Source: Stylophora pistillata (taxonomy: Eukaryota). From it: DNA of 64,000 nucleotides. Below, piece by piece: positions 281 to 53,288 of this stretch (position 1 is the first letter of the stretch; every line of letters begins with the position of its first letter). The position numbers were made by a program, and so were the translations under genes. The stretch lies in contig NW_019217793.1 in assembly GCF_002571385.2 (NCBI RefSeq), positions 1,229,054 through 1,293,053 of the forward strand, read 5' to 3'. Under the pieces are notes generated by a model. The model made no database searches. It was not told where the DNA came from and was given only the letters and a program-made list of their open reading frames with translations.

Positions 281-1691
281 GTCATTTGCATGTTGTTTGA
301 ATTTCCACCCTTAACGGCTCTTGGTGAAAGAAATTGAGACGTATATTCTTGGAAATTTATAGTAGAAGTTACGTGTCTCTCGCTTTCAGTTTTATTCGCA
401 GACCGCAGGAGCCCATTGTACCCAAAGCTTTGAACTTCCATGGAAATAGAAATTAGAAAATTCTAAAGAAATGGTTATTACCTCGTGGTAATGATGAAGA
501 ACTTTCGTGGAGGATGTTAGAAGTTGCGGATTTAAAGAGCGGTTTTCTGTTCGCTTCTCAGTTTCCAGTTTGTTAGACTCTTTTACTTTTAAGCGAGCTT
601 TCAAGTAAAGTAGGTGTAGATCGCCCTCGCAGTTCCCATTTCAGCATGATAAAACGGTAGTCATAATCGTGAATAATTACAATTTTAATGATACTTAAAG
701 GAATGATTGCATAAACACGAGGTCCAACAGGAATTATGACCTGTCTTTTGGGAGTTAAGCCGGTATACTCTTAAGACTATTATTGAAGCCAAATAGAGAG
801 AGATTCATACACACAGTACCAGATTCGCGACTAATTTTAATATTTACAGAACAAGAGCAAGTAATAACTATGGTACTACTACGTTTGCTTATGTAGCTTC
901 AAAAATCTGAGAATCTATCCCCTTTGAATTAAAAAAACTCGTATAATTGTTTCTACAAGCAATACAAAATGTATCTTTAAAATACTCAATCTGTTTCCTG
1001 AGTGTAGTTTCCTTTGGTTTTTACTGTTGTGTAAATGCCTATAATGTACATGTTCAGGCCAATTAATTGTCTGCGGCAGTGGCCAACTACTTTGGTCACT
1101 GCGCACATTTTGCTTTTCAATACTTGTGTAATTTAATTTGCCTATGTCTCTCCTTTTTAATGTACTTTAATGTTGAAATAATTATTTGTAAATAGTGCAA
1201 AAATAAACAAAGACTAAAAGAACTAAATAATCGTACAAAAGTAAACTTCCAAAGCTTAATTCACACCAACAAAACATGTTTAACTTGAAACGGCTTTAAC
1301 AACATGAGAGTCAGCGACAAGAAAAAGGGAGAGACTAGATTTTAGTTTTGGGCCAGATTGCTAAGAAATACTAAAAATGGCGGTCCGCGAGTCAATTTAG
1401 TATAATTTTAAAGAGATGAGCCACTCTTTGGAATTTTAAGCTTAACATAAGTGTCATTACTTCATACATACTTGTTAATGGCGGAGATGAAATTTATACG
1501 GTTTCTATAACAACTCCTTCCTCAGTGATACGCTGTCAAAAGCGAACTAACTCGCGAAGGCCTGATGTTTGCGCGTATTCCTACCACTTTAAATTACAGT
1601 TCCCAAGTTCCGTTAACACGACCACCATATGTTTCAAGGAGTGGCCATTCCTTAGTTTCTGCCTTCTAAGAAATGAGAATCTTTGCTCAAA

Positions 1692-3520
1692 TTAATTAGC
1701 TGCGATTAAACTTGTGGTTTCCTGGTGTTCCTCCTTCGAAACGTCAACTTTGTCACTTTGGACTGTCAAATTCTGCATTTCGAAACGTGTGCTTCCGCTA
1801 TCTGATCGGTGGATCGGCAACTTGTTATTTCTATTGTTCCCTGAGCCCGCTTTTTTCGCAAATTGCACGGATAAATGTGTCGTGCTCCACCTTTTTCCAG
1901 GATTGCCAGAAGCAGCTCTGGGATAGAGTTTAACGAAATCGTCGTAAGCATCACGGTAATGCCAGTTTGGTTTTTCATCTTTCCAGCCTTTGAACATCTC
2001 TGTGACCATTTTTTCGGCACCTTTCTCCGGAATTCCGTCGGGATAGAGTGTAATCTTAACCTCTTCCTCTTTTTCTTTTCCTAACTGGTCGTCGCCTTTT
2101 CTTTTGCTTTTGTTGTCTGCAGTGCTATTTCCCTGTTTGTCGTGGTCTTCACTGGGGTCTTCTTCACAGCGCAAACCCCTAGTGAACTCAGTAAAAGTCT
2201 TAATAGCCCATTTCGCCTCCCGTTCTTCAAAGGTGCATATGTCTATGAAATAATCGTAAAAGTACAGTTAGATTACCTAAACAAATGTCACTAGCTTTCG
2301 CAGATTTTAAACCAACCGCTGACGATTACAAAAAAACATCAACAACATCAGCAATGAATCAAACTAAAAACAAAACAGACGGCAAAGTATATCTGAAAAG
2401 TCTTAAAAAGACGGCCCTCAAGCTTTCGATATATGCCAAAACATGCAGGCAGACCCAAACCATTCAGATGAAACAAATACTCTGATCATAAATACCCTCT
2501 GGCGGCTACATGTTACGTTCCGCACGACCCTATATTTGATGTCCTCAGCGCCCTAAGCAATGATGATTGTGTTTATTATGTTTGATACTTTTCGTCATTT
2601 CACATATATACTCATGCAGTTTTATCGAATAGTACAAGTACTTCGTCGCAAATCATATTCGGCCTGTTCCTGCCAGTAGCAGATCAGTGATATGTTTCAC
2701 GACTTTTGATGGAAACAGCCTCCTTCAATTCTAGGCGGATAAGTACGGGTTAGATAATACACAAAAGATATTTTGCGTTACCGTCTAGGATATCTTGGTC
2801 TTTGAGTATGCAATTCTTATTGATAATCACCACAGTAGCGAAAAAAGCCATGACAAGGAAAACTACCCAGGCGAAAATTTGTGATTGGGCCCCAGCGGTC
2901 TCTACTGCCAAGTCGTACTTTTTGAGCTCCTCTGGATCAGTTACGTTTCTCTTGCGGATATCCGGCCCTACCTCGCCGCAAATGTAGTAATCTTTTTGTA
3001 AAAATGCCACGCACAACCATACAGACGCCCCCACCAGTGCCTTGACTATGCTGGGAAAGGTGCGTCCACAGAAGAACCCAAAATGATAATAATCTGCCAC
3101 CAGACACCTGTCAGAGAGTTCCCAGACGTCTCCGATGAGTAGCATGTTGAGGAAGAAAATAATCGTGGCTGGACCGTACAACCAGAAGCGGCCATAAATC
3201 TGATGATTCTCCAAGGGACAGTCAAAGACTTCGGCATTCAGTAGAAATTGAAGGCCAAGCACTGCTAGTGAAATTACCAGGTTCGTCAAAGTAGTCTTGT
3301 TGTTGGTGATTAGGCCTAGAATGGTTGTTTCTTCGTCAGGCGAGAGCGTTTTCTTGATTTTGTCTTTAACGACCTTGAAATATCTAGATACACGGCTGGA
3401 ACCTTGAGCCCCATAATCTTGGGCCCCTGAATCTTGGGCCCCGGAATCTTGGGCCCCAGAATCTGGGGATGGTTCGATCACGTGTGTCTCATTACCAGGC
3501 TCTGTTCCCGCAGCGGACAT
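1692..3520 (-). CDS. CALHM/FAM26-like large-pore channel, paralog 1 (exons 3520-2782, 2242-1692; ~429 aa)
   Basis: Four hydrophobic segments with CALHM-like motifs FDCP..N..YG..WLYGPA, SVWLCVAFLQKDYYIC and SQIFAW. A phase-1 GT-AG intron (GACG|GTAACG...TTTCATAG|AC) joins ORFs 2750-3544 and 1692-2174 in frame. Confidence 0.85.
3404..3463 (-). repeat. 15-bp coding tandem repeat x4 (DSGAQ)
   Basis: Repeated gaatcttgggcccc units; protein DSGAQDSGAQDSGAQDYGAQ. Confidence 0.9.
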
Positions 3521-5727: not shown

Positions 5728-6335
5728 CCCGAGTAATAAACTTGCTCTTTTGACTATGGTGCTCTACTATCTTGTTCTGGAGGTGAAGCTCGGCTAGTCT
5801 ACTGTTTATTGATTTGAAATTTAGCATAGAAATGACAACGTAAACGTTTCGTGGTTAGGAGGTCAATTTAAGGTCAGTAGTTTCGTCACAAGGACTGATG
5901 TTCAGCACTCACGCTATCCTTCTTGTTAAGATTTCAGTCACGATTTTGAAAATATTTGACGAATTTTGTGGCTGGACTCTTAGTAAAAGAAAAATTCCCA
6001 ATTCATCAACTTCGTTTGTCGGACTTTCATTTAAATTTTATTTAATCAGTCCCGGTTTTTGTGCTATGCTAGTTCTGGGCCGGTTACTTTTGAACGTGAC
6101 CAAACTTGAAACGTAACCAAAACATTTCCGTGCGCGTGTGCATTTTCCTCATCGCTCCTTCCTGTGGCATAAGTCTTAAGACAGTGCAACCAAAAACTTC
6201 AGACAGCAGAACGATGATAGTAAATTATTTTATTACTTAATTTTCCGTTACATTTCAAAGTACTTATAACTCACGCAGTTGACTTATGTCACGTTCCCAA
6301 CCTTATTCTTGTTTAGTTGCATGATAATTGGCAAA
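5728..6335. repeat. Duplicated non-coding segment; paralogous copy at ~10117-10676 plus ~15723-15800, more diverged partial copy at ~5170-5550
   Basis: Colinear matches such as gagtaataaactt, gtttcgtcacaa, tcaacttcgtttgt, aatcagtcccggtttttgtg, ccaaacttgaaacgt and acgcagttgactt. Confidence 0.85.
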
Positions 6336-8398: not shown

Positions 8399-10676
8399 GG
8401 TGGATTGACGATTGAATCCCTACCTATGATGAAAAGCTGAAGCTAAGTAGTTCTCGCAGTCTTTTTTACGCAGGATAGCATTTTAAATCGCAAGGGGTAA
8501 CTTTTGGGAGAGATAAAGGAAGTATTGCGCTTCACAGAGGCTTGCCTTTCCTTGCCTAAGAAACCTGAAATTAGAATGTACTGGTTGATTTTTTTTTGTT
8601 TTGTTTTTTAGATCATAATGCCCTTTCTCTCAAGTTGGACTTTGAACCACAACCTGCAGCTGTAAAATAATTCAAGTAGTTTGGTCGGTCGTTTTAAAAT
8701 AAGATAAACAAGGACCAGAGATGAAGTCATCCGCGTATCGGTTATGGCTTCCGCTCATCAAGAACCTTCAAATAAATCCCCTTTTCAATATTAATACAAT
8801 TCGAAGTTGAAGGCACATTCCGCTTTGATTTGAACGGATGACCAAGAAAACGCGGACACGGAGTGATGTCAAGTACAACTTTTGATGACATTTCTCCGAA
8901 CTAAGACAACGACAACAACAAGAAAGGAAAAAAGAAACTTAAGGATTATCTGACTAGATTTCTAAGACCAGAAGTGACGTTGTATGTAACTCGATATATG
9001 AAGTAATAGAGAGAACAAACGTGACACAAGTCGACATCGAATATGCCTGCCCCTGAATTTATACACGTAGCGAACTGGTTAACAGTTATCATGAAAACTG
9101 GATGACTGGAAAAAAATAATTTTGTCTTACGACTCTCTCGACTCTTTGTAAACAGTAAAAATCAATTGGTGTTACAACGAGATAACTGTGGAAAACGTTT
9201 TCTGTGACACCAAATTAACTCACACAAGGTCTCTGAAATTCCGGTTTTAATGCTACCAACTTAACTCGCTTCTTGCGACAACAACAACAACAACAAAAAA
9301 AAAAAAAAAAAAAAAAAAAAGAACGTCACCGAAACGTTCTGCACGTGGTAAAACTAATCTGAGCATAGCGAGGCCGCGAAGTCACACTCGTCATGAGCCG
9401 TCACGCAATGCAAACAAAACATTCTGAACATAACACCTTCCAACCAATGAGCAGTTCTCCATCTCATTACAACTTAACTTGATTATGTGATGGAATTGTC
9501 ATCAAAAGTTTTTCAATCACTTCAATAGAAAAACGGCTGGCTGATAAAGGGGAAACTAGCCTTACTCGATCTACAGTTTTTATTAGCATTAAGTTCTTAG
9601 CGAATTTCGCATAACTCTCTCAGAAAAGGCCCCCCTTTATAGATCTAATCCATGAATTTATTAATAAATGTTTCTGCCTCTGATCATCAAAGTCATTCGG
9701 TCAATTTTGAAGCTTGAAAATAAGTGTTTATACATAAGCATCAGCAAAGGAGACAGATTTGGAAGGAAGAAAAGGATATTTTATCCATTGATATTAAAGA
9801 AGTACTCATGTTTTTCGCTCGCAAAACTTTGAATACAGTTTGAGAAATCTACCTTTCTTATCAGCCACTCTAAACAATGATATTAATTAGGTTATTCTCC
9901 CAAAATGTGAAATATCAGGGCAAAATCGAGTTATGCGTTTCGTTTTAAACTTTACAGGTTCGAAATTCGGTTGAAACGATTTATTATGCCAGATACCCAT
10001 GATTTGGGTCAGGCTTGCGTTTCATGGTCCGAAAACTTCGTTAATTCTTGTGAGCAATTACTAACAACTTGAGCCGCGAAAGTAAACAGTAGTCTGTATG
10101 CCGAAACATTTACTTACCGGAGTAATAAACTTACTTTTACTTTCCTCTTTACGAATCTTGCTCTGGATGTATAGCACAGCCAGTCCACTTTTTTTTTTTA
10201 TTTGAACCTTGGCGTACAAATGACAGCTTAACGTTTCATGAGTAGAAGGTCAATTTCACGTCAGTTTTTTCGTCACAAAAACTGATGTCAAGCACACTCG
10301 CTTTCCTTCCTGTTCATATACCAGTCACGATTTGGGAAATATGCGACCTACTCTATGACTAGACTCTTAGCAAAAAAAAATTCCTAATTCCTCAACTTCG
10401 TTTGTTGGATATTTATTCAAAGTTTATTCAATCAGTCCCGGTTTTTGTGTTAAAGTACTGGGCTGGTGTTTGAACGTGAATTAACATAATTTGCGCGAGG
10501 TTAACCAAACTTGAAACGTGACCAAAACATTTCCGTGCGCGATGACATTTTTTTCCTCATCGCTCCAAGCTCCGGCATAAGTCAGAACGGTGCAACTAAA
10601 ACAACTTAAGGCCACAGAAAGATAATATTAAATTATTTTAATACTTGAAGTTCGGTTAAATGTCGAAGTAATTATA

Positions 10677-10698
10677 TCTTATTAGACGTTTTGTTGTA

Positions 10699-10746
<48 letters not shown>

Positions 10747-13700
10747 GTAGGGCGACTCAAAATACAAATAACGAGTAAAAATACTCAGCGATACTACACA
10801 ACAAAACGTCTAATAAGGTATTTATTATCCAACACGCCAAACTGTTATTTCAGTGCGGGCGAATTTCGCGGGAGTTACTATATCACGGGCGACGAGCGGG
10901 GCGAGAAATGTAGTCTGAGATATGAGTGGTCAGCGATGAAATAGCTTTAATACATCATGTAGAGACAAATCATTTGTAGTTGTTGCATTAAATAATCGTG
11001 GTATCAATCCCGAAATTTTAACAATAAATTTTGCTAAATAACAAATTAAGCAATTTTTCAAAAGCTTCGACTATAAATATATTTTTCACTGCTCTAATAA
11101 GCAACGAAGGTATCGGGAGAGGTATCAAAAAATTATATTTTTGTTTGGTAACTTGCTACGCGACGTAAAGAAAGTATCGTGACCGACTTCCGGTTGTCCA
11201 AGGCGTTAATCACAGCTGGCGCGCTTTTCACTTGATTTTTGCAATCTCTACTATTTTTCCGGGAAAAGAAAAGCTAGGGAACTCTACAAAAATTTAGTTC
11301 TCGATCTGAATAGTTTTTTAGTCTTTTTATAAGTTTGTATCTACAGGCTAAGATGGAAAACTTTCATAACAAAAATTCAAGTAGCTGAAGTTCTCTTACT
11401 TCATATTATATATAAACAATCGCCTCTATTCCATGTTAAAATATCCAAGGAGGAAAACTCAGAGCTTCAAGAAACAGCCAAATTAAGGCTAATGTGTTTA
11501 CCATCCCTCAAATGTTTCGATAAAGGTCGCTCGATTTAGGAGACCTTTTCTCAAAACAACCATATGATAAATAATTATGTTTTCCGTTCAAACTTTTTCT
11601 TTCTATTCACTTTAACAGAAGCACTCAGGATGAAAACTAAACGTCGAATCGAACAAAAATAAAACATCTTGAACTCTGAGATGTTCTTCATATTGTTGGC
11701 TCCATCACGTTACGATTTTGGATCCGTGACGTTCCTGAATATATATTTTAATCGATTACCAAGAACTGTATTCGCAATCCTGGTAGATTAAGGTCTAGAC
11801 ATGACATTAAAGTCCACTTGATCCGAAAAGAAGCCACCCTAACGGCAGGTGAAATGTTGTGTAAGCGTCTCTGCGAAAGGCACATTCAGACAACTTGCGT
11901 GGAAAAACTGGCCACAGCTATCACACCCAAGCCAATCCTCTCCATCGTCGTCTTTACAAATCTTACAGACTGCGGTGTTTCTCCTGTAATTGAACAAAAA
12001 GATACAGTTAGTTGATGAGAGTTTTGCGGCATTTGAGAAACAATACTGTTTGATACCATCAAAGCTTACTCATCAAGGTCATCGTAACAGGAGCCAAATA
12101 TGACAGACGTTATTCTCTCTCTTTCCATTTGCACGTTGTAACTTCCATTGACATCTAACCCCTCACACAAACACCGAGCAAACTGAGAACAAACAAACAA
12201 AACATTTTATTACATTCGAAACTAGGATGTAGAGTCATATCAAAGCAGGTTTTAGCAAGTGGTTATGCTACTCACAAGACATACAATCACACCACAGTTA
12301 TAACTATCAGTCTGTGTGTAATGTAGTGGCTCAACACACGGCCATGACTTGCAGTTCCATCCCGTTTTGAGATCAGCAACGGCACTGCAGAGTCAAACAA
12401 AGTACAANTCGAAATCAAGCGATCCAAATCTGATTTTCCTTTCAGGATTCAGTTTATCATTAAACATGCAGCTAACCTTTCTCTTAGCGTCACCATCATC
12501 AACATCGTCTTTGCTGTCTCCAACGAGAATCACATCAGCCTTCGGAGTCTTCTTTTTCCAGCGCCGTCTGGGGGGCAAATGCTTGTGAAATACTTGATGG
12601 TATATAGTTGACGTGATCTTTAATTTCTTCTTGACCGGGCTTATTCTGAGAGGAATACCATTTGTTGACGAGCAGCTCTTCTGCAGCATCAGCTGAATAT
12701 TTTCCAATTGCTTCAGAGCTGCTGACATTGTGCTCTCGTCATCTACTATGTACGCAGTATTCTTGACAGTATCGATCTCATCAAGAAATCGTTTCCTCAG
12801 TTTTTCAACTGTAGGAACCAGAGTGGTGCCACTGGGACTGTTGTTGGGTAGCTGGACATCTGACCTCTCCTCAGGATCTGCTTCTGCTCGTTTGCACTTC
12901 ATTGATTCATCGCCAGAGGTGTTGGCTAGCCTTACATGGTCGTCAGAGGATGATGATACTTTCGCTGTACCGTGGGGAATGCCAGACCTCTGTGCGCTAT
13001 TGTCGCGCTTATTTATAATAAAGTGATCCAGATCAAGAGAGATGAAGACACTGCTCCTGTATTGATGGGGTAGTGATTCAAATCCCCACTCAGAGTAGCA
13101 GGCAAACGCTGCAAAGAAATGTTTGCAGGGGTAATTACTTTTCAGCCACGAGGCACAAGTACAACTTGGATACGAAAAGTCAACTAGCTCCTTCTTGTTT
13201 ATATTAGCTGCGCTTTTCACGTTGAATTGGCCTTTCTGAAAATTTACGAATGAGACGTTGGCTTCGGTGAATTCCCCAGCAGCAAATCTACTATTCAAAC
13301 AGTGTTTAACGAACTGTGGTGGTCGGTTGTGTAGATACGACGGTATCCTAGAATTGTATCTTCCATAGGCATCGCTAAACTTCAAGTTCTTTTCCAAATA
13401 GCTTCTGTGCGAGTCAGGAACGAAAGACTCTACCAGCATCGTTGCAATGCCATAAACTGATTTGTCAATTGATCTCGGAAGGTAATCGTACTTGAACAAT
13501 TTGTTTTGCGCCTCAGTGCCATTATTGGTGTTAACTATGTTTGTCACCTGCTGCTTTCGAAAAGCTTGCGCCCAACGAGCTTTGCATGATAGCCATGTGT
13601 TGTTTAGATAGTTCTGAACATTAGGTTTGTCTTTGTAAAGTCGGGATTCTTTCAAAGCATTTAATCGCTTCTCTAATTTGTCTACCGTAGGAGCATAGGC

Positions 13701-15722
13701 GATGCTCTTCATGAGCTCTAAGAATATTTCCTGCTCAGCAGACGAAAGGCCATTCTTCTTTGACTTCGACCAGCGTTGCATTGCTTGCAATCTGTGGAAA
13801 TCACATATATACACCACACTTTTGGGAAATTGTTCTTCGAGAGCAGCGATTTCTGCATTGGAGTAATCCACCATGAAGTACGCCGGATTCCACGCTGGGT
13901 TCCATCCCTTAATTATAGCAAGTGCTTCACTTATAGAGGCTTGATCCTCTGATTGACACATAAATTCAGCCACGACCTTATATCCCACGTTAGTATGTAC
14001 ACAAACGAAAAAGAGAGGAATTGCGTACCTTGTAGTTTTGTATGTGGCGTCCATCAAGGCCAGTTCACTACCATATCTTTCAAGCATTCGTTGTTGCCAT
14101 GGCTCTTGATGAACAAAGAGGAAGGTCTCCCCAGCAGCTCTAGATCTTGGTTTATCTATGTCGTTAATGACGACGTCTCTGGTTCTGTAAAAGAAGTTGC
14201 TTTTGGGAGACTTGGTTTGCCATTCTTCAATTTTTCTAGCCAATGCTTCTTGGTCATCATCGCAATACTTCACTGCTGAAATCGCCTTGGCAATGTGGTT
14301 ACGCAAGTCCCGGCGACCAGGGTAGTATCGTCTGTTTGTCTTCTTCGGTCTTCGTTCCTCGGGTTGGTAAGAAAATAATTCTTCTGCCACATACTTGTCA
14401 AGGGACCTTTGCACCTCAGAAAGGTTGGTTATGTTTTCTTTTACAAGCTCGTAGATTTTGTCGACTACACGTTTATCGACGTATTGTCCTATCGTGGACG
14501 ACTCCCCGACAGGGTGGTTGACATGGGTGGAGCTCAAGGGGATCTTCACGTAGAACCGCGTCGAAGTACGGAAACTAAATCCCGGGTCTCTTTTCGATTT
14601 GTCATTGATTTCTTTTAGAATGGCCCTCTTAGCCATCACAAAGCCATTATCCGACAGGCACCTTGCCTTGTCAACGAAGTAATCGTTATACACCTCAATA
14701 CAACGGATCTGCATAACGGCTGAGCAATCCAATTTTCTCGAATTCTGCAAACGTATTCTGCTCTTGCTTGCATAGTCGTGTACGTTATTGTTGTCTTTCT
14801 TCAAGGTACAACCTCCGCGGGCATCCTAAGCGATACATAGGATTTAAATATAGATCACGGACGTGTTCTACGGGGGCAAAATTTATATTTCTCTCAGCAG
14901 CGATATCATTTGGGATTTTCACTGACCTCGCTGCTATTTGACCAAAGAAATATGAGGTCAACACCCTTCCCCTCACATTTCTTTGGGTAACTTGGTCATT
15001 AGCAGCTCAAATTCAACCTCTTGACCCTCAGTTTCCCTTCTATTTTTTTCATTACCTTATTTGTTTACTTTCGAATTGTCTGTCTGTTTATTCATTTATT
15101 GTAATTATAACCAACCTTTGTAGATCCATGTATACAATGTCGAGTTTCACTGCTACAGATTGAAAAGGGATGGCCAAAGAAATGTATGGGGACATTTCCG
15201 CGGTTATTTTCAAAGACAGGAGGTGCTGACAAATGAAAACAAAAAGAATTGTTGAGCAACATGTCTTATTTCCGGTTAAAGTGCAAAGGTTACAATTGGG
15301 ACTTTCACAAGGCGCTAAGAACCCGACAATGAAAACCTTTGACCCAAAGCCACAGTTAGCTGACCGTTAAAGTAGAGACAGATGAACAACAAAAGAATGA
15401 CAGCAACAACGAAAACAAACAAAGAAACTCAAATGAAATAAAAACAGGGAGTGCAGCCGTAGCGGTCGTCTTTCACAGTTTGCATAAGACTGCAATCCAC
15501 AAACTCTGAAAGAAAGAGGTGGTTCTTATCTATCTCAATTATCCCTGAATTACACAGAATAGAATAGGAAAATATTTTTTTTCGTAACTACAATCCAATT
15601 CTTCGCTTGCGCGATGCGAGAAAACCTGTTTAACCGGTACTTCAATAGACGAGTACAAATACCGCGTGATATTTGTACTCGTCTATGGCGTTATTTGTAC
15701 TCGTCTAGGTGTAGTTGGATAA
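10677..15722 (-). mobile_element. ~5 kb DNA-transposon-like insertion carrying a MULE-type transposase gene; hairpin termini; 8-bp flanking direct repeat TAATTATA
   Basis: Interrupts the segment paralogous to 6220-6335 exactly. TAATTATA at 10669-10676 and 15723-15730. ~145-bp hairpin at the left end. ttattatccaac (10822-10833) is inverted against gttggataataa (15714-15725). Confidence 0.85.
11839..15225 (-). CDS. Spliced CARF/ALS2CR8-like + MULE DDE transposase + SWIM + Ulp1/C48-like + PHD protein (exons 15225-15116, 14825-12477, [missing exon(s)], 12384-12276, 12182-12070, 11983-11839; 5' exon not found)
   Basis: MULE motifs LMDATYKT, FMVDYS, ICDFH, TNNGTEAQN. SWIM CTCASWLKSNYPCKH. CARF-like FFGHPF..CIHG, KLDCSA, RFYVKIP..H..H, RRYYP..DLRNHI. 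Ulp1-like QTDSYNCGVIVCLFARCL. PHD CKIC..WLGCDSCGQFFHASC..FTC. GT-AG sites are phase-consistent except across the N at 12408. Confidence 0.85.
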
Positions 15723-16014
15723 TAATTATAATTTACGCAGTTGACTTGTCAGTGTCACGTTCCTTACCTTATTCTTGTTCAGTAGCAGGAGAATTGGCAC
15801 TCATAGGCCCGTGGATGCCGCTGATTTTTCAAATATCTTTATTTGCGGCTTGAAATAGTTTCAATATATTTAAACACTAAATGCACCAACGAAATCGATT
15901 CAAAGATTCAGGATTCATCTTTCGGCAAAGTTTTAAAAAATTCTGTTCATATAGTTGAGACTGTATTTAATTTTCTTTTGTCCAAAGTCGACAACACAGT
16001 CAAGGTAATTTGGT

Positions 16015-27400: not shown

Positions 27401-29561
27401 TATGATCCAGGGAAATTGTTACGCGGTGGAATGTACGGATGCGGAGGGGTGTCAGGTGAAGCGAGCAAAACCTTCCGCTTACAACCCTACTGTGGCATAC
27501 GTATACCGTGGCAATGAAAGACCGATAGGGGGTGAGTTAGGAGAATAATTTTGGGCGAGGCATCTTCCGGAATGTCAGGTTTGAGGAATGTTTAGGTTGA
27601 AGAAGGTTTTCAGGGTTACGAAGGCTCGTAAACTCCATTTCCGTTTACTATCTTGGATGATTTTCCGCTGTAGCCTCCACTTTCTTCTCGTATTCTTTAG
27701 AGCAGAATGTTGTTTCAGTCTGGAAACTGGGATGCTTTCTCAACTTCAAAAACCTTGTTTCGTTAACTATTCCGCTATTTCCTCTGTTGAGTGGTTGTTC
27801 GCTTAACATCAGACATATCAACATAATCATTCTAAGCAACATATGGCAATCTGCGGTCTTTCCTTACACTAAGGTAGCACGGAAAGCCGTAAAAATCTTG
27901 AACAAAAGCTCATCTTTCAAACCGGCAGTCTAAATCCCACAGGGATCAACGAACGCTTTTCATTCCACTAATTTATTCTTATTTTTCTCGTTGCCATGTT
28001 CCCACCAATAACGCAGCTCCATTTTCTGCCTTTAAAAGCACACACAACCCACAATTCCTCTATTCGCTCCGACGAAGGGCTAACGCTCGAAACGTCAGCT
28101 TTTGTAATCGTTACGGTGGCCAATTTNNNNNNNNNNNNNNNNNNNNNNNNNNNNNNNNNNNNNNNNNNNNNNNNNNNNNNNNNNNNNNNNNNNNNNNNNN
28201 NNNNNNNNNNNNNNNNNNNNNNNNNNNNNNNNNNNNNNNNNNNNNNNNNNNNNNNNNNNNNNNNNNNNNNNNNNNNNNNNNNNNNNNNNNNNNNNNNNNN
28301 NNNNNNNNNNNNNNNNNNNNNNNNNNNNNNNNNNNNNNNNNNNNNNNNNNNNNNNNNNNNNNNNNNNNNNNNNNNNNNNNNNTTGTTGTTTGATTTATCA
28401 TCTACGGGTTTATGTCGAATTAATTTAATGGCCTGCTCCCAGTTGGCTTGTTAGCTCAATTGGTAGAGCGCTGCACTAGTATCGCAGAGGTCAGTGGTTC
28501 GAATCCCGTACAGGCCTGAATTTTTTTCAGGTCTGATTTTCACTATTGCTTAAATAGTGCTTTACTGCGAAGGATCGTGCACATATACGTTTCATAACCG
28601 CAGTTCATATATATGTATTTCATATGTTTGTTGTTTGATTTATCATCTACGGGTTTATGTCGAATTAATTTGATGGCCTGCTCCCAGTTGGCTTGTTAGC
28701 TCAATTGGTAGAGCGCTGCACTAGTATCGCAGAGGTCAGTGGTTCGAATCCCGTACAGGCCTGAATTTTTTTCAGGTCTGATTTTCACTATTGCTTAAAT
28801 AGTGCTTTACTGCGAAGGATCGTGCATATACATTTCAACTTTGTTGATATATCCAAATTATTTTTAACATCAGACACATTTGATATTTTCCGCCATCGCT
28901 AACGTATGTGCGAACTTCTCTAAATGCATGCCACAAGCCTGCGACAAGACGCTTACCTTTCCTCTCTCCACTCGAGGCTCCTATATCGATCAACGCAAAC
29001 TCAACTGGGACGAACGCAATCAGATACGAATGAAGTATTCGTCGTATTCTAGCCAACCAGTTCACCTTGCTGTAAGGAGTGAGAGTGCGAAACCTTGACT
29101 CTATCTTTAGAGAAAACGATCAGTACTAGAGGGTGAAAAATATGGTAAGCTTTTTTTCTATTTCACTACATGTTATTTCTTTGTCTTTATTCCTAGATCC
29201 TTTACCGGGTGCTGAAAAGCCAAGCCCAGACGCGTGCGATAAGTTGACCGTCAGTAACACCATATTTAACGCGACACTTCGCGGGGGAATCAAGTCAGGA
29301 AACTTTACTGACAAGGGCGTGGTCAAGCACATGAACGAATGTTCAGCTTATTGCTGCGCAGACGCACAATGCAACGTGGCTTTTCTAATCCGAGACAACT
29401 GTTTCTTAGTATCGTGTAAAGACTATGAGTCTTGCCAAATAAAACCAGCTCTTTCTGAGTATTATCACCCAAGACTGGCTTATGTGAACTGGAGTCCGCC
29501 CGACGACGAAATCCCAGGTATTACCTTTAGTTGTTAAATCCATCGAGTCACTTTTTTTTGT

Positions 29562-51496: not shown

Positions 51497-53288
51497 GGCT
51501 CTTTACACTGTCAATCCTAATGACGAACGTCTTCTGGCCCTCAAAGATTTTTTTGATCAACGCACTGTTAAGGAACTTAAATCTGAAACCCTAGCTACTT
51601 TTCTTAGCTGAACTAGGGCTCATACTCAATTGTTATTCATTCGGGGACAACTTTTTCAAACAAACCAACGGCGTAGCCATTGGTACCAAAATGGGACCCA
51701 GCTATGCCAATCTTTTTGTAGGTTTTGTTGAACACCAATGTTTTAGCCAATACTTTGGCCCCAAACCTGAACTCTACGGTCGCTATATCGACGACTGTAT
51801 CGGCGCTACCTCCTCTACCAGAGAGGAGCTAACTCAATTCATAGCCGCAGTCAATTCTTTTCATCCGGCTGNNNNNNNNNNNNNNNNNNNNNNNNNNNNN
51901 NNNNNNNNNNNNNNNNNNNNNNNNNNNNNNNNNNNNNNNNNNNNNNNNNNNNNNNNNNNNNNNNNNNNNNNNNNNNNNNNNNNNNNNNNNNNNNNNNNNN
52001 NNNNNNNNNNNNNNNNNNNNNNNNNNNNNNNNNNNNNNNNNNNNNNNNNNNNNNNNNNNNNNNNNNNNNNNNNNNNNNNNNNNNNNNNNNNNNNNNNNNN
52101 NNNNNNNNNNNNNNNNNNNNNNNNNNNNNNNNNNNNNNNNNNNNNNNNNNNNNNNNNNNNNNNNNNNNNNNNNNNNNNNNNNNNNNNNNNNNNNNNNNNN
52201 NNNNNNNNNNNNNNNNNNNNNNNNNNNNNNNNNNNNNNNNNNNNNNNNNNNNNNNNNNNNNNNNNNNNNNNNNNNNNNNNNNNNNNNNNNNNNNNNNNNN
52301 NNNNNNNNNNNNNNNNNNNNNNNNNNNNNNNNNNNNNNNNNNNNNNNNNNNNNNNNNNNNNNNNNNNNNNNNNNNNNNNNNNNNNNNNNNNNNNNNNNNN
52401 NNNNNNNNNNNNNNNNNNNNNNNNNNNNNNNNNNNNNNNNNNNNNNNNNNNNNNNNNNNNNNNNNNNNNNNNNNNNNNNNNNNNNNNNNNNNNNNNNNNN
52501 NNNNNNNNNNNNNNNNNNNNNNNNNNNNNNNNNNNNNNNNNNNNNNNNNNNNNNNNNNNNNNNNNNNNNNNNNNNNNNNNNNNNNNNNNNNNNNNNNNNN
52601 NNNNNNNNNNNNNNNNNNNNNNNNNNNNNNNNNNNNNNNNNNNNNNNNNNNNNNNNNNNNNNNNNNNNNNNNNNNNNNNNNNNNNNNNNNNNNNNNNNNN
52701 NNNNNNNNNNNNNNNNNNNNNNNNNNNNNNNNNNNNNNNNNNNNNNNNNNNNNNNNNNNNNNNNNNNNNNNNNNNNNNNNNNNNNNNNNNNNNNNNNNNN
52801 NNNNNNNNNNNNNNNNNNNNNCAAAAAGTTATACATCGGCGAAACAGGAAGACGACTAGGTGACCGATTCCGAGAACACCTTCGCGACGTAGAAAGGAAT
52901 GACAAGGACGCATCCAAACCAGTCGCTAGACACTTTAATTTACCTAATCATTCTAAACAACATATGGAAATCTGCGGTCTTTCCTTACATTTAGGCAACA
53001 CGGAAAGCCGCAAAACTCTTGAACAAAAGTTAATCTTTCAAATCGGCACTCTTAATCTCACAGGTATCAACGAACGCTTTTCATTCCACTAATTTATTCG
53101 TGTTTTTCTCGTTGCCATGTTCCCACCAATGGCGTACCTCCGCTTCTACATTTAAACCCACATAGAGCCCACAATTCCTCCATTCGCTCTAATGAAGGGC
53201 TAACGCTCGAACGTCAGCTTTTTTATTCCATCACGGTGGCCAGTTTACAATTTCAACTGAGTTGATATAACCAAATTACCTTGTTACC

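What the first reader, a model, noticed from the sequence alone, without database searches (positions are those of the whole stretch)
10669..15730. MULE-transposase cargo inside an element whose ends are not MULE-like (long hairpin plus short asymmetric inverted repeat)
Seen: the boundaries are fixed by an empty paralogous site in this window (6255-6285, aaagtacttataactcacgcagttgac). The insert is flanked by TAATTATA twice and has no long symmetric TIRs. The left end is a ~145-bp hairpin (10674-10821, apex gccc-gta-gggc) followed by ttattatccaac, which is inverted only at the extreme right end. The right end carries a 17-bp palindrome pair and a third tatttgtactcgtcta copy (15645-15707), similar to motifs in the left hairpin. 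Known: MULEs usually have long TIRs and 8-11-bp TSDs, although non-TIR MULEs exist. Inference: either a non-TIR MULE lineage using hairpin ends, or a hairpin-ended element (reminiscent of tyrosine-recombinase Crypton-type elements) that carries the MULE gene as a passenger.
Basis: partly seen in the sequence, partly recalled or inferred. Interest (0 to 1): 0.8.

Follow-up and report, generated by a model that had tools for sequence, protein, structure and literature searches.

The report
MULE transposon nested in hairpin-ended repeat
This is two coral transposons, one inside the other: an ordinary long-TIR MULE landed in a copy of a very abundant 570-bp hairpin-ended repeat and later lost its right end, so the hairpin ends are not the MULE's ends.

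Summary
The "MULE with non-MULE ends" reading does not hold.

**Outer ends.** The outer ends (10672-10869 and 15575-15725) belong to a ~570-bp non-coding repeat that I call HP. HP has thousands of copies, which normally carry about 219 bp of unrelated middle sequence and no MULE.

**Inner element.** The inner 10870-15571 is an independent MULE.
- Its terminus GGGAGTTACTA... starts exactly at 10870.
- The same terminus sits in different flanks at five other loci.
- Complete relatives have ~250-bp TIRs and 8-10-bp TSDs.
- In the window the last ~0.7 kb, including the right TIR, is missing, together with the HP middle.

A single N at 12408 is an assembly gap. It makes the ORF's C-terminus an artefact.

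**What HP is.**
- It makes no TSD in 18 of 21 copies.
- It has a 12-nt site pair, a 140-nt hairpin and a second small palindrome.
- I verified the same layout in a 2.3-kb element of this genome that encodes a DUF3504 (Crypton-type) tyrosine recombinase.
- HP is therefore probably a non-autonomous Crypton-type element. Helitron2-type is the rival.
- No autonomous partner was found.

The scan had already reported such hairpin-ended families on other DNA of this genome.

The parts
10672..10677 (+). HP left-terminal 6-mer, TTATAT here and ATATAT in the family; behaves as the element-borne spacer next to the hairpin
   Evidence: Conserved in front of CTTATTAG in 22-28 of 30 left flanks. In the reads, 10672 T>A is the majority letter (table 3).
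10678..10817 (+). HP long terminal hairpin (140 nt). Tip is TTTTGAC-GA-GCCC-GTA-GGGC-GA-(G)TCAAAA at 10734-10762.
   Evidence: Inverted repeat I1. DNA fold -54.8 kcal/mol, z -14.1. Present in every complete family copy.
10822..10833 (+). HP inner site TTATTATCCAAC, 4 nt inside the hairpin
   Evidence: Inverted copy only at 15714-15725 (I18). Conserved in all copies.
10834..10869 (+). HP internal sequence up to the point where the MULE entered (HP position about 197)
   Evidence: Family matches stop at 10871. The alignment to short copies diverges there.
10870..11117 (+). Left terminal inverted repeat of the MULE, terminus GGGAGTTACTATATCACGGG
   Evidence: The same terminus lies next to unrelated flanks in L021, L022, L023, L027 and L028. 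It is inverted at the other end of complete relatives.
10870..15571 (-). MULE body, truncated on the right: about 696 bp including the right TIR are missing
   Evidence: L022 and L023 match up to 15571, then continue about 430 bp plus an inverted TIR. No right TIR exists anywhere in the window.
12408..12408 (.). Single-N assembly gap inside the MULE; the ORF end beyond it (12393-12407) is not trustworthy
   Evidence: N located. Contigs of three runs stop matching at 12407 / 12409 and run on for about 420-1300 letters (table 8). Not filled.
12411..14825 (-). Main coding exon of the MULE transposase (ALS2CR8, ZSWIM1-3 RNaseH-like/MULE and SWIM domains)
   Evidence: Pfam. 97 homologues, the best at 54-57% identity over 91-95% of the query. 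A single unbroken tblastn match 14825-12528.
15116..15229 (-). Probable upstream exon of the transposase gene
   Evidence: Residues 20-57 of P0025 match at 68% identity. AG acceptor and GT donor at its borders. Exons were not joined.
15575..15725 (+). HP right part (HP positions about 418-570): poly-T, CCAAT (15595-15599), palindrome 15645-15686, third repeat 15692-15707, far-end site GTTGGATAATAA 15714-15725
   Evidence: 97.4% identical to a family copy. More than 1780 candidate copies. Repeats. All copies end at GGATAATAA.
15726..15730 (+). TTATA: target DNA, present once in the paralogous empty site (6264-6268)
   Evidence: Alignment of filled and empty sites.

Best explanation
**Three events built this stretch.**

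1. A copy of a ~570-bp non-coding, hairpin-ended repeat (HP) inserted into one of two old paralogous segments. It made no real target duplication.
2. A conventional MULE then transposed into that HP copy at HP position about 197. This MULE has ~250-bp TIRs, makes 9-bp TSDs and carries a multi-exon transposase gene with ALS2CR8, MULE and SWIM domains.
3. A single deletion of about 0.9 kb removed three things: the MULE's last ~0.7 kb including the right TIR, the downstream TSD copy, and HP positions about 198-417.

**What is left.** HP-left, then a MULE lacking its right end, then HP-right. This looks like one element with foreign ends.

**What is shown and what is inferred.**
- Shown: the two elements are independent of each other, and the MULE junction lies exactly at its terminus.
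- Inferred: the order of events and the deletion.

**What HP is, by layout.** I infer that HP is a non-autonomous Crypton-type (tyrosine-recombinase) element.
- A 12-nt site sits next to a long hairpin, and its inverted copy forms the far end.
- The joined ends would therefore mirror the internal site-hairpin junction.
- It integrates without a TSD at AT-rich pseudo-sites (AATA-N8-TATT).
- My confidence in this Crypton sub-claim is about 0.55.
For: **The HP ends are a family of their own.**
- The left end has 2428 first-look candidates and the right end 1785.
- Twenty fetched copies are about 570 bp long. Their ~219-bp middle is absent from the window, and none contains a MULE.

**The inner element is independent.**
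- L021, L022 and L023 match 10869/70-12407 and 15136/15376-15571 at 97-99.6% identity, but they lack the HP ends.
- The terminus GGGAG... abuts six different flanks.
- TSDs: AATCAAGAA in L022, ATACGAAGA in L028/L089, and 8-10 bp in L085 and L086.
- In L022 the TIR pairs 248 with 267 bp at 80% identity.
- The window has no right TIR.

**The transposase is typical of its family**.

**The locus itself is supported.**
- Flank-to-HP junctions on both sides are seen in contigs of two separate studies (records 1, 8, 9 and 16).
- The empty paralogous site aligns across the insertion point.

**The Crypton layout is verified in this genome.**
- L095 carries a DUF3504 ORF (91 bits, over the cut-off) between an inverted site pair at 660-695 / 2785-2820.
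- It also has a 153-nt hairpin with a GA-GGCC-GTA-GGCC-GA tip.
- The repeat unit of that family runs from position 661 to about 2977 in many copies, with abundant deletion derivatives.

**HP insertion behaviour.**
- No TSD at any register in 21 flank pairs, tested against shuffled pairings.
- Flank logos are AATA at -11..-8 and TATT at +8..+11.
Against: - The two inner junctions (10869|10870 and 15571|15575) occur only once in the assembly. No displayed read or contig piece bridges them, so they rest on the assembly contigs alone.
- The assembly is rich in gaps around these repeats, and there is an N at 12408.
- The deletion is inferred. No intermediate state was seen, such as an intact HP or an HP holding a complete MULE.
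- For HP, no recombinase-encoding partner with the same ends was found. Six DUF3504 loci show no similarity to HP.
- Published animal Cryptons are described as lacking terminal repeats (PMC3212892).
- Three of the 21 HP copies do have flanking duplications: 5, 8 and 42 bp.
Confidence: 0.85

Rival explanations
1. Passenger model: the hairpin-ended element acquired the MULE segment and the 5-kb composite was mobilised as one unit to this site by the HP recombinase.
For: - Both HP ends needed for mobility are intact.
- The empty paralogous site cannot tell whether HP arrived alone or already loaded.
- A Crypton-Mariner composite, MarCry-1_FO, is on record (PMC3212892).
Against: - Both composite junctions are unique in the assembly. 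Every other left-end match stops at 10871 and every other right-end match starts at 15575.
- The left junction sits exactly at the MULE terminus, which is the mark of MULE integration and not of capture.
Confidence: 0.07
2. The outer HP family is a Helitron2/Helentron-type (HLE2) non-autonomous rolling-circle element, not a Crypton-type one.
For: - The published HLE2 layout is short 12-16-nt terminal inverted repeats with a stem-loop after the right repeat, and no TSD (PMC11417382, PMC4067079). HP fits this.
- HLE2-type Rep/helicase genes exist in this genome.
Against: - The flanks show no T|T insertion site.
- No HP ends and no 12-mer with up to 1 mismatch lie within roughly 5-10 kb of six Rep/helicase matches.
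- No long hairpins lie near three intact Rep/helicase genes.
- The same layout does enclose a tyrosine-recombinase gene in this genome.
- The flank pattern looks like hybrid recombination sites.
Confidence: 0.25
3. Assembly chimera: the HP/MULE junctions, or the join across the N at 12408, are artefacts of short-read assembly in repeats.
For: - There is an N at 12408.
- Most "truncated" HP copies and all "palindromic dimer" HP copies abut N runs.
- No bridging piece was displayed for the inner junctions.
Against: - Both outer flanks belong to one paralogous locus in the right order and orientation.
- HP and the MULE share no long word at either junction that could mislead a graph assembler.
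- The flank-to-HP joins are seen in two studies.
Confidence: 0.05
4. One reading: a non-TIR MULE lineage whose true ends are the hairpin and the 12-nt asymmetric repeat.
For: In this one copy the only transposase gene between the ends is the MULE gene.
Against: - Thousands of HP copies lack any MULE sequence.
- MULE relatives lack HP ends and have their own TIRs and 9-bp TSDs.
Confidence: 0.01

Closest known systems
MULE / Mutator-superfamily DNA transposons of animals with an ALS2CR8 + MULE + SWIM transposase (relatives of ZSWIM1/3 and CARF)
   Same: Domain set, long TIRs, 8-10-bp TSDs, abundant internal-deletion derivatives, and homologues in sea anemones, soft corals, priapulids and ticks.
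   Different: Nothing unusual about the family. This particular copy lacks its right TIR.
Crypton DNA transposons (tyrosine recombinase; DUF3504-type CryptonA) and their non-autonomous derivatives such as CryptonI-1N1_RPro
   Same: - No TSD.
- Many short derivatives.
- An element of this genome with HP's layout encodes a DUF3504 recombinase.
- The flanks resemble hybrid recombination sites.
   Different: - Animal Cryptons are described as having no terminal repeats of any kind (PMC3212892). HP and the coral recombinase element have a site pair and a long terminal hairpin.
- HP itself has no identified recombinase partner.
Helitron2/Helentron elements and their non-autonomous HINEs (DINE-1)
   Same: Short asymmetric inverted repeats, palindromes at both ends, a stem-loop outside one repeat, no TSD, and very high copy number (PMC4067079, PMC11417382).
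   Different: - No T|T target.
- The hairpin stem is about 70 bp, much longer than a short stem-loop.
- No Rep/helicase partner was found.
MarCry-1_FO of Fusarium oxysporum (Crypton fused with a Mariner-type transposon)
   Same: A tyrosine-recombinase-type element and a DDE transposon lie in one composite.
   Different: MarCry has several copies and moves as a unit (PMC3212892). The composite here is a single copy, explained by nesting plus deletion.

Membership tests
MULE / Mutator superfamily (inner element 10870-15571) | DDE transposase with a MULE domain | tested here: met
   PF10551 at 43.5 bits (cut-off 27.6), PF21056 at 50.2 bits and PF15299 at 87.9 bits. Homologues carry the same domains.
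MULE / Mutator superfamily (inner element 10870-15571) | Long terminal inverted repeats | tested here: met
   In L022, 248 bp pair with 267 bp at 80% identity. The termini are identical at both ends of L022, L023 and L028. The window keeps only the left TIR.
MULE / Mutator superfamily (inner element 10870-15571) | 8-11-bp target site duplication | tested here: met
   9 of 9 bases in L022 and in L028/L089, and 8-10 bp in L085 and L086. L023 has none. It cannot be read in the window because the right end is deleted.
Crypton (tyrosine-recombinase DNA transposon), outer HP element | Encodes a tyrosine recombinase, or is a deletion derivative of an element that does and shares its ends | tested here: not met
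   HP is non-coding apart from a 68-aa frame. All long frames found were N runs. Six DUF3504 loci show no similarity to HP. No listed HP copy lies within 5 kb of any of the 91 listed DUF3504 matches. Only a subset of HP copies could be checked.
Crypton (tyrosine-recombinase DNA transposon), outer HP element | Integration without a true TSD (at most short microhomology repeats) | tested here: met
   No shared 4-6-mer at any register beyond shuffled pairings in 21 copies. The window copy has a 5-nt TTATA repeat.
Crypton (tyrosine-recombinase DNA transposon), outer HP element | Same end design as a recombinase-encoding element of the same genome: terminal hairpin with a GA/GNA tip, a site next to the hairpin with its inverted copy at the far end, and a second small hairpin | tested here: met
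   L095 unit 661-2977 with a DUF3504 ORF at 1357-2196(-).
Helitron2/Helentron (HLE2) non-autonomous element, outer HP element | 12-16-nt terminal inverted repeats with a stem-loop outside the right repeat | tested here: met
   A 12-nt pair at 10822-10833 / 15714-15725 and a hairpin at 10678-10817. The definition comes from PMC11417382.
Helitron2/Helentron (HLE2) non-autonomous element, outer HP element | Insertion between T and T | tested here: not met
   The first base beyond the GGATAATAA end is A in 19, T in 22, C in 3 and G in 4 of 48 flanks. The base beyond the ATATAT end is mixed.
Helitron2/Helentron (HLE2) non-autonomous element, outer HP element | A Rep/helicase-encoding partner with the same ends | tested here: not met
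   No HP similarity and no 12-mer within roughly 5-10 kb of six Rep/helicase matches. No long hairpins near three intact ones.
SINE/LINE-type retroposon, outer HP element | Variable TSDs at most copies and a 3' tail | tested here: not met
   Only 3 of 21 copies have any duplication. Apparent truncations are assembly gaps.

The most novel reading that the evidence does not exclude
The HP shell still has both of its recombination ends, so the composite could be moved in trans by the HP recombinase. It would then be a Crypton-type vehicle carrying a complete MULE transposase gene, like MarCry. Separately, the HP flanks read as hybrid sites: target arm AATA + element spacer ATATAT on one side, and element arm + variable target spacer + target arm TATT on the other. 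The spacer is never swapped between the two sides. That is what exchange of a single strand of a folded hairpin site would give, as at integron attC sites, and I found no such mechanism described for a eukaryotic transposon.
Probability: 0.1. Interest if true: 0.6.

Novelty: new member of a known kind. Interest (0 to 1): 0.3.

Why it matters
For the finding as written, it matters little. It is a nested transposon insertion trimmed by a deletion, and it shows how such a pile-up can imitate a new element type.

Three side results may be useful:
- This copy holds the only assembled, near-complete transposase gene of a young MULE family. Read depth suggests about six copies exist in the animal.
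- HP is one more sequence-unrelated family with the hairpin-plus-site-pair design that this scan keeps finding in this coral. Here I tied that design independently to a tyrosine-recombinase gene.
- The HP flank logos give a concrete candidate target site, AATA-N8-TATT, for testing how these elements integrate.

Tried and rejected
- **Helitron partner.** I searched the genome for Helitron_like_N and DUF6570 and fetched roughly 5-10 kb on either side of six matches. None has HP ends or long hairpins.
- **HP's 68-aa frame as the start of a longer gene.** All "long open frames" turned out to be N runs. The peptide has no meaningful match in the Rep/helicase or recombinase loci.
- **Palindromic HP "dimers" (L006-L014).** All of them abut assembly gaps, so they are probably assembler fold-backs. 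I did not use them.
- **"5'-truncated" HP copies as evidence for retroposition.** Almost all are cut by N runs.
- **TSD hunt.** The longest-common-substring scan and the register scan against shuffled pairs were both negative, apart from L005 (8 bp), L020 (42 bp) and the window (5 bp).
- **Rfam.** Only a sub-threshold hit to a miRNA-precursor hairpin model, and no ribozyme.
- **Reads.** They support the flank-to-HP joins and show the gap at 12408, but they displayed no piece bridging the HP/MULE junctions.
- I did not fill the N. In one search I saw that other copies carry extra sequence at that point, and I made no use of those letters.
Full report
**1. The observation**

The window is part of a 398-Mb coral genome.
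- The 803-codon frame at 12393-14804(-) matches ALS2CR8, ZSWIM1-3 RNaseH-like and MULE above their cut-offs, and SWIM just below its cut-off.
- The left end folds into a long hairpin: arms 10674-10725 / 10770-10821, DNA fold -54.8 kcal/mol, z = -14.1.
- The 12-mer ttattatccaac at 10822-10833 has its only inverted copy at the extreme right end, 15714-15725.
- The right end carries a perfect 17-nt palindrome and a third copy of its arm.
- A diverged paralogue of the flanks is uninterrupted at 6260-6270. It is 74-82% identical to the flanks.

**2. The outer ends are a repeat family of their own**

- The left 200 bp has 2428 first-look candidates in the genome and the right 150 bp has 1785.
- All other matches stop at 10871 and start at 15575.
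- Twenty fetched copies are about 570 bp long. They consist of the left part, about 219 bp of conserved middle that the window lacks, and the right part. None contains MULE sequence.
- I call this family HP.
- Read depth over the HP parts is thousands of times that of the flanks.

**3. The inner part is an independent MULE**

*Copies elsewhere.*
- Window 10872-12392 has near-identical copies at other loci.
- When fetched, L021, L022 and L023 match 10869/70-12407 and 15136/15376-15571 at 97-99.6% identity, but they do not contain the HP ends.

*Termini, TIRs and TSDs.*
- The terminus GGGAGTTACTATATCACGGG begins exactly at 10870 in the window. At six places in five other loci it abuts unrelated flanks.
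- In L022, L023 and L028 the same terminus recurs inverted at the far end. In L022 the TIRs pair 248 with 267 bp at 80% identity.
- TSDs are 9 bp in L022 (AATCAAGAA) and in L028/L089 (ATACGAAGA). These last two are one duplicated locus. TSDs are 8-10 bp in L085 and L086. L023 has none.

*The truncation in the window.*
- Relatives continue after the equivalent of 15571 for about 430 bp and then the right TIR.
- The window has neither. After three letters it resumes in HP at the poly-T of HP position about 418.
- The simplest history is MULE integration into HP after ...GAATTTCGC, followed by one deletion of about 0.9 kb. That deletion took about 696 bp of MULE, the second TSD copy and about 219 bp of HP.

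**4. The gene and the gap**

- The frame is a typical member of a widespread animal MULE transposase family. It has 97 homologues, and the best cover 91-95% of the query at 54-57% identity, in sea anemones, soft corals, a priapulid and ticks.
- One unbroken match runs from 14825 to 12528. A further exon at 15116-15229 matches residues 20-57 of P0025 and has splice-site borders.
- I searched the exons separately and did not join them.
- The single N at 12408 is an assembly gap. Contigs from three runs stop matching at 12407 or 12409 and run on for 420-1300 letters. The last five codons and the stop of the listed ORF are therefore not real.
- Contig depth over the ORF is 113.9 against 19.6-20.5 in the flanks in run X1, with a similar ratio in X15. 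This suggests about six copies in the animal, although the assembly holds only one full ORF.

**5. What HP is**

*Layout, in window orientation.*
- A 6-mer (ATATAT in the family).
- A 140-nt hairpin. Its tip on this strand is stem, GA, GCCC, GTA, GGGC, GA, stem.
- Four letters, then the site TTATTATCCAAC.
- Non-coding DNA with a CCAAT motif.
- A 17-nt palindrome.
- The inverted site GTTGGATAATAA as the far end.

If the ends were joined they would mirror the internal junction between hairpin and site. One tandem pair, L065, shows that junction as GGATAATA-G-ATATAT-CTTATTAG.

*Insertion behaviour.*
- HP makes no TSD. In 21 flank pairs no 4-6-mer is shared at any register beyond shuffled pairings.
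- Three copies have duplications of 5, 8 and 42 bp. I cannot explain these.
- The flanks are not random. AATA stands at -11 to -8 in 18-28 of 30 left flanks. After six variable letters, TATT stands at +8 to +11 in 25-36 of 48 right flanks.
- Put back together, the target reads AATA-N8-TATT, two inverted arms around a spacer.
- The integrated copy reads as two hybrid sites. The element's spacer is always on the hairpin side and the target's spacer is always on the far side.
- That is the pattern of site-specific recombination. The one-sidedness is an inference that needs a test.

**6. Crypton-type or Helitron2-type**

*For Helitron2.* The published Helitron2/Helentron layout (short inverted repeats, a stem-loop outside one of them, no TSD) fits HP.

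*Against Helitron2.*
- The T|T target is not seen.
- Six Rep/helicase loci have no HP ends.
- Three intact Rep/helicase loci have no long hairpins nearby.

*Leads from earlier notes.* Earlier notes of this scan on other DNA of this genome describe the same hairpin design. Most assign it to Cryptons and two assign it to Helitrons. I treated these as leads and tested one case myself.

*The test case, L095.*
- Among 91 DUF3504 matches, L095 has a recombinase ORF at 1357-2196(-).
- The ORF lies between a site at 2785-2820 and its inverted copy at 660-695.
- The site at 2785-2820 abuts a 153-nt hairpin with a GA-GGCC-GTA-GGCC-GA tip.
- A second, smaller hairpin sits just inside the far end.
- The genome-wide repeat unit of that family runs from position 661 to about 2977. 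There are several gene-bearing copies and many deletion derivatives.

*Conclusion.* In this genome, the design that HP has encloses a tyrosine-recombinase gene. HP shares the design, not the sequence, and I found no recombinase element with HP's ends. I therefore rate Crypton-type at about 0.55 and Helitron2-type at about 0.25. Published animal Cryptons are said to lack terminal repeats, so the design itself appears undescribed. It is not new to this scan.

**7. Caveats**

- The two inner junctions are unique in the assembly, and the displayed reads did not bridge them.
- The flank-to-HP joins are seen in two studies.
- The assembly breaks often at these repeats. Palindromic HP "dimers" and most truncated copies end in N runs.

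**8. Verdict**

This is an ordinary nested insertion that mimics a chimeric element. The MULE is a normal member of a known superfamily. The shell is one more family of the coral's hairpin-ended, probably recombinase-driven, mini-elements.

Noticed in passing
window 12408: A single N hides an assembly gap of at least several hundred bases inside the MULE. Any gene model that crosses it, including the listed 803-aa ORF end, is unreliable.
   Followed up: partly
window 12409-15158: Contig depth over the transposase ORF is about 5.8 times that of the unique flanks in two studies, yet the assembly holds only one full copy. Several young MULE copies are probably collapsed or lost in gaps.
   Followed up: partly
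L006-L014 and L039-L046: HP copies that look like long palindromic dimers centred on the hairpin all end in N runs on the extra arm. They are likely assembler fold-backs at the hairpin, not real structures.
   Followed up: partly
L013 410-613(-), and about 1660 candidate copies genome-wide: HP carries a 68-aa acidic open frame (MADNLN...) behind a poly-A/Kozak-like start. It is free of stops in most of the 150 copies scored. It runs towards the hairpin, opposite to the recombinase gene in L095. Its meaning is unknown.
   Followed up: partly
L005, L020: Two HP copies are flanked by exact duplications of 8 bp and 42 bp that abut the element ends, unlike the rest of the family. Unexplained.
   Followed up: no
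L001, L003, L078; L063, L069, L070: HP sits at the same position next to two other short repeats in several loci. One of them is a palindromic MITE-like unit ending ...cgtggaata. This means either repeated targeting of one site or larger composite repeats.
   Followed up: no
window 10734-10762: The hairpin tip has tandem G-A mismatches and a GTA loop on the + strand only. The complement would give TC/TC and TAC. In this copy 10756 is C where most copies have G.
   Followed up: partly
L095 660-2977 (G000:C1371): A 2.3-kb element with a DUF3504 tyrosine-recombinase ORF, a terminal 153-nt hairpin and an inverted site pair. There are about 112 candidate copies, mostly derivatives of about 900 bp that keep roughly 245 bp of one end and roughly 640 bp of the other.
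   Followed up: partly
window 28127-28382 and 51872-52821: Two further N runs lie in the window.
   Followed up: no
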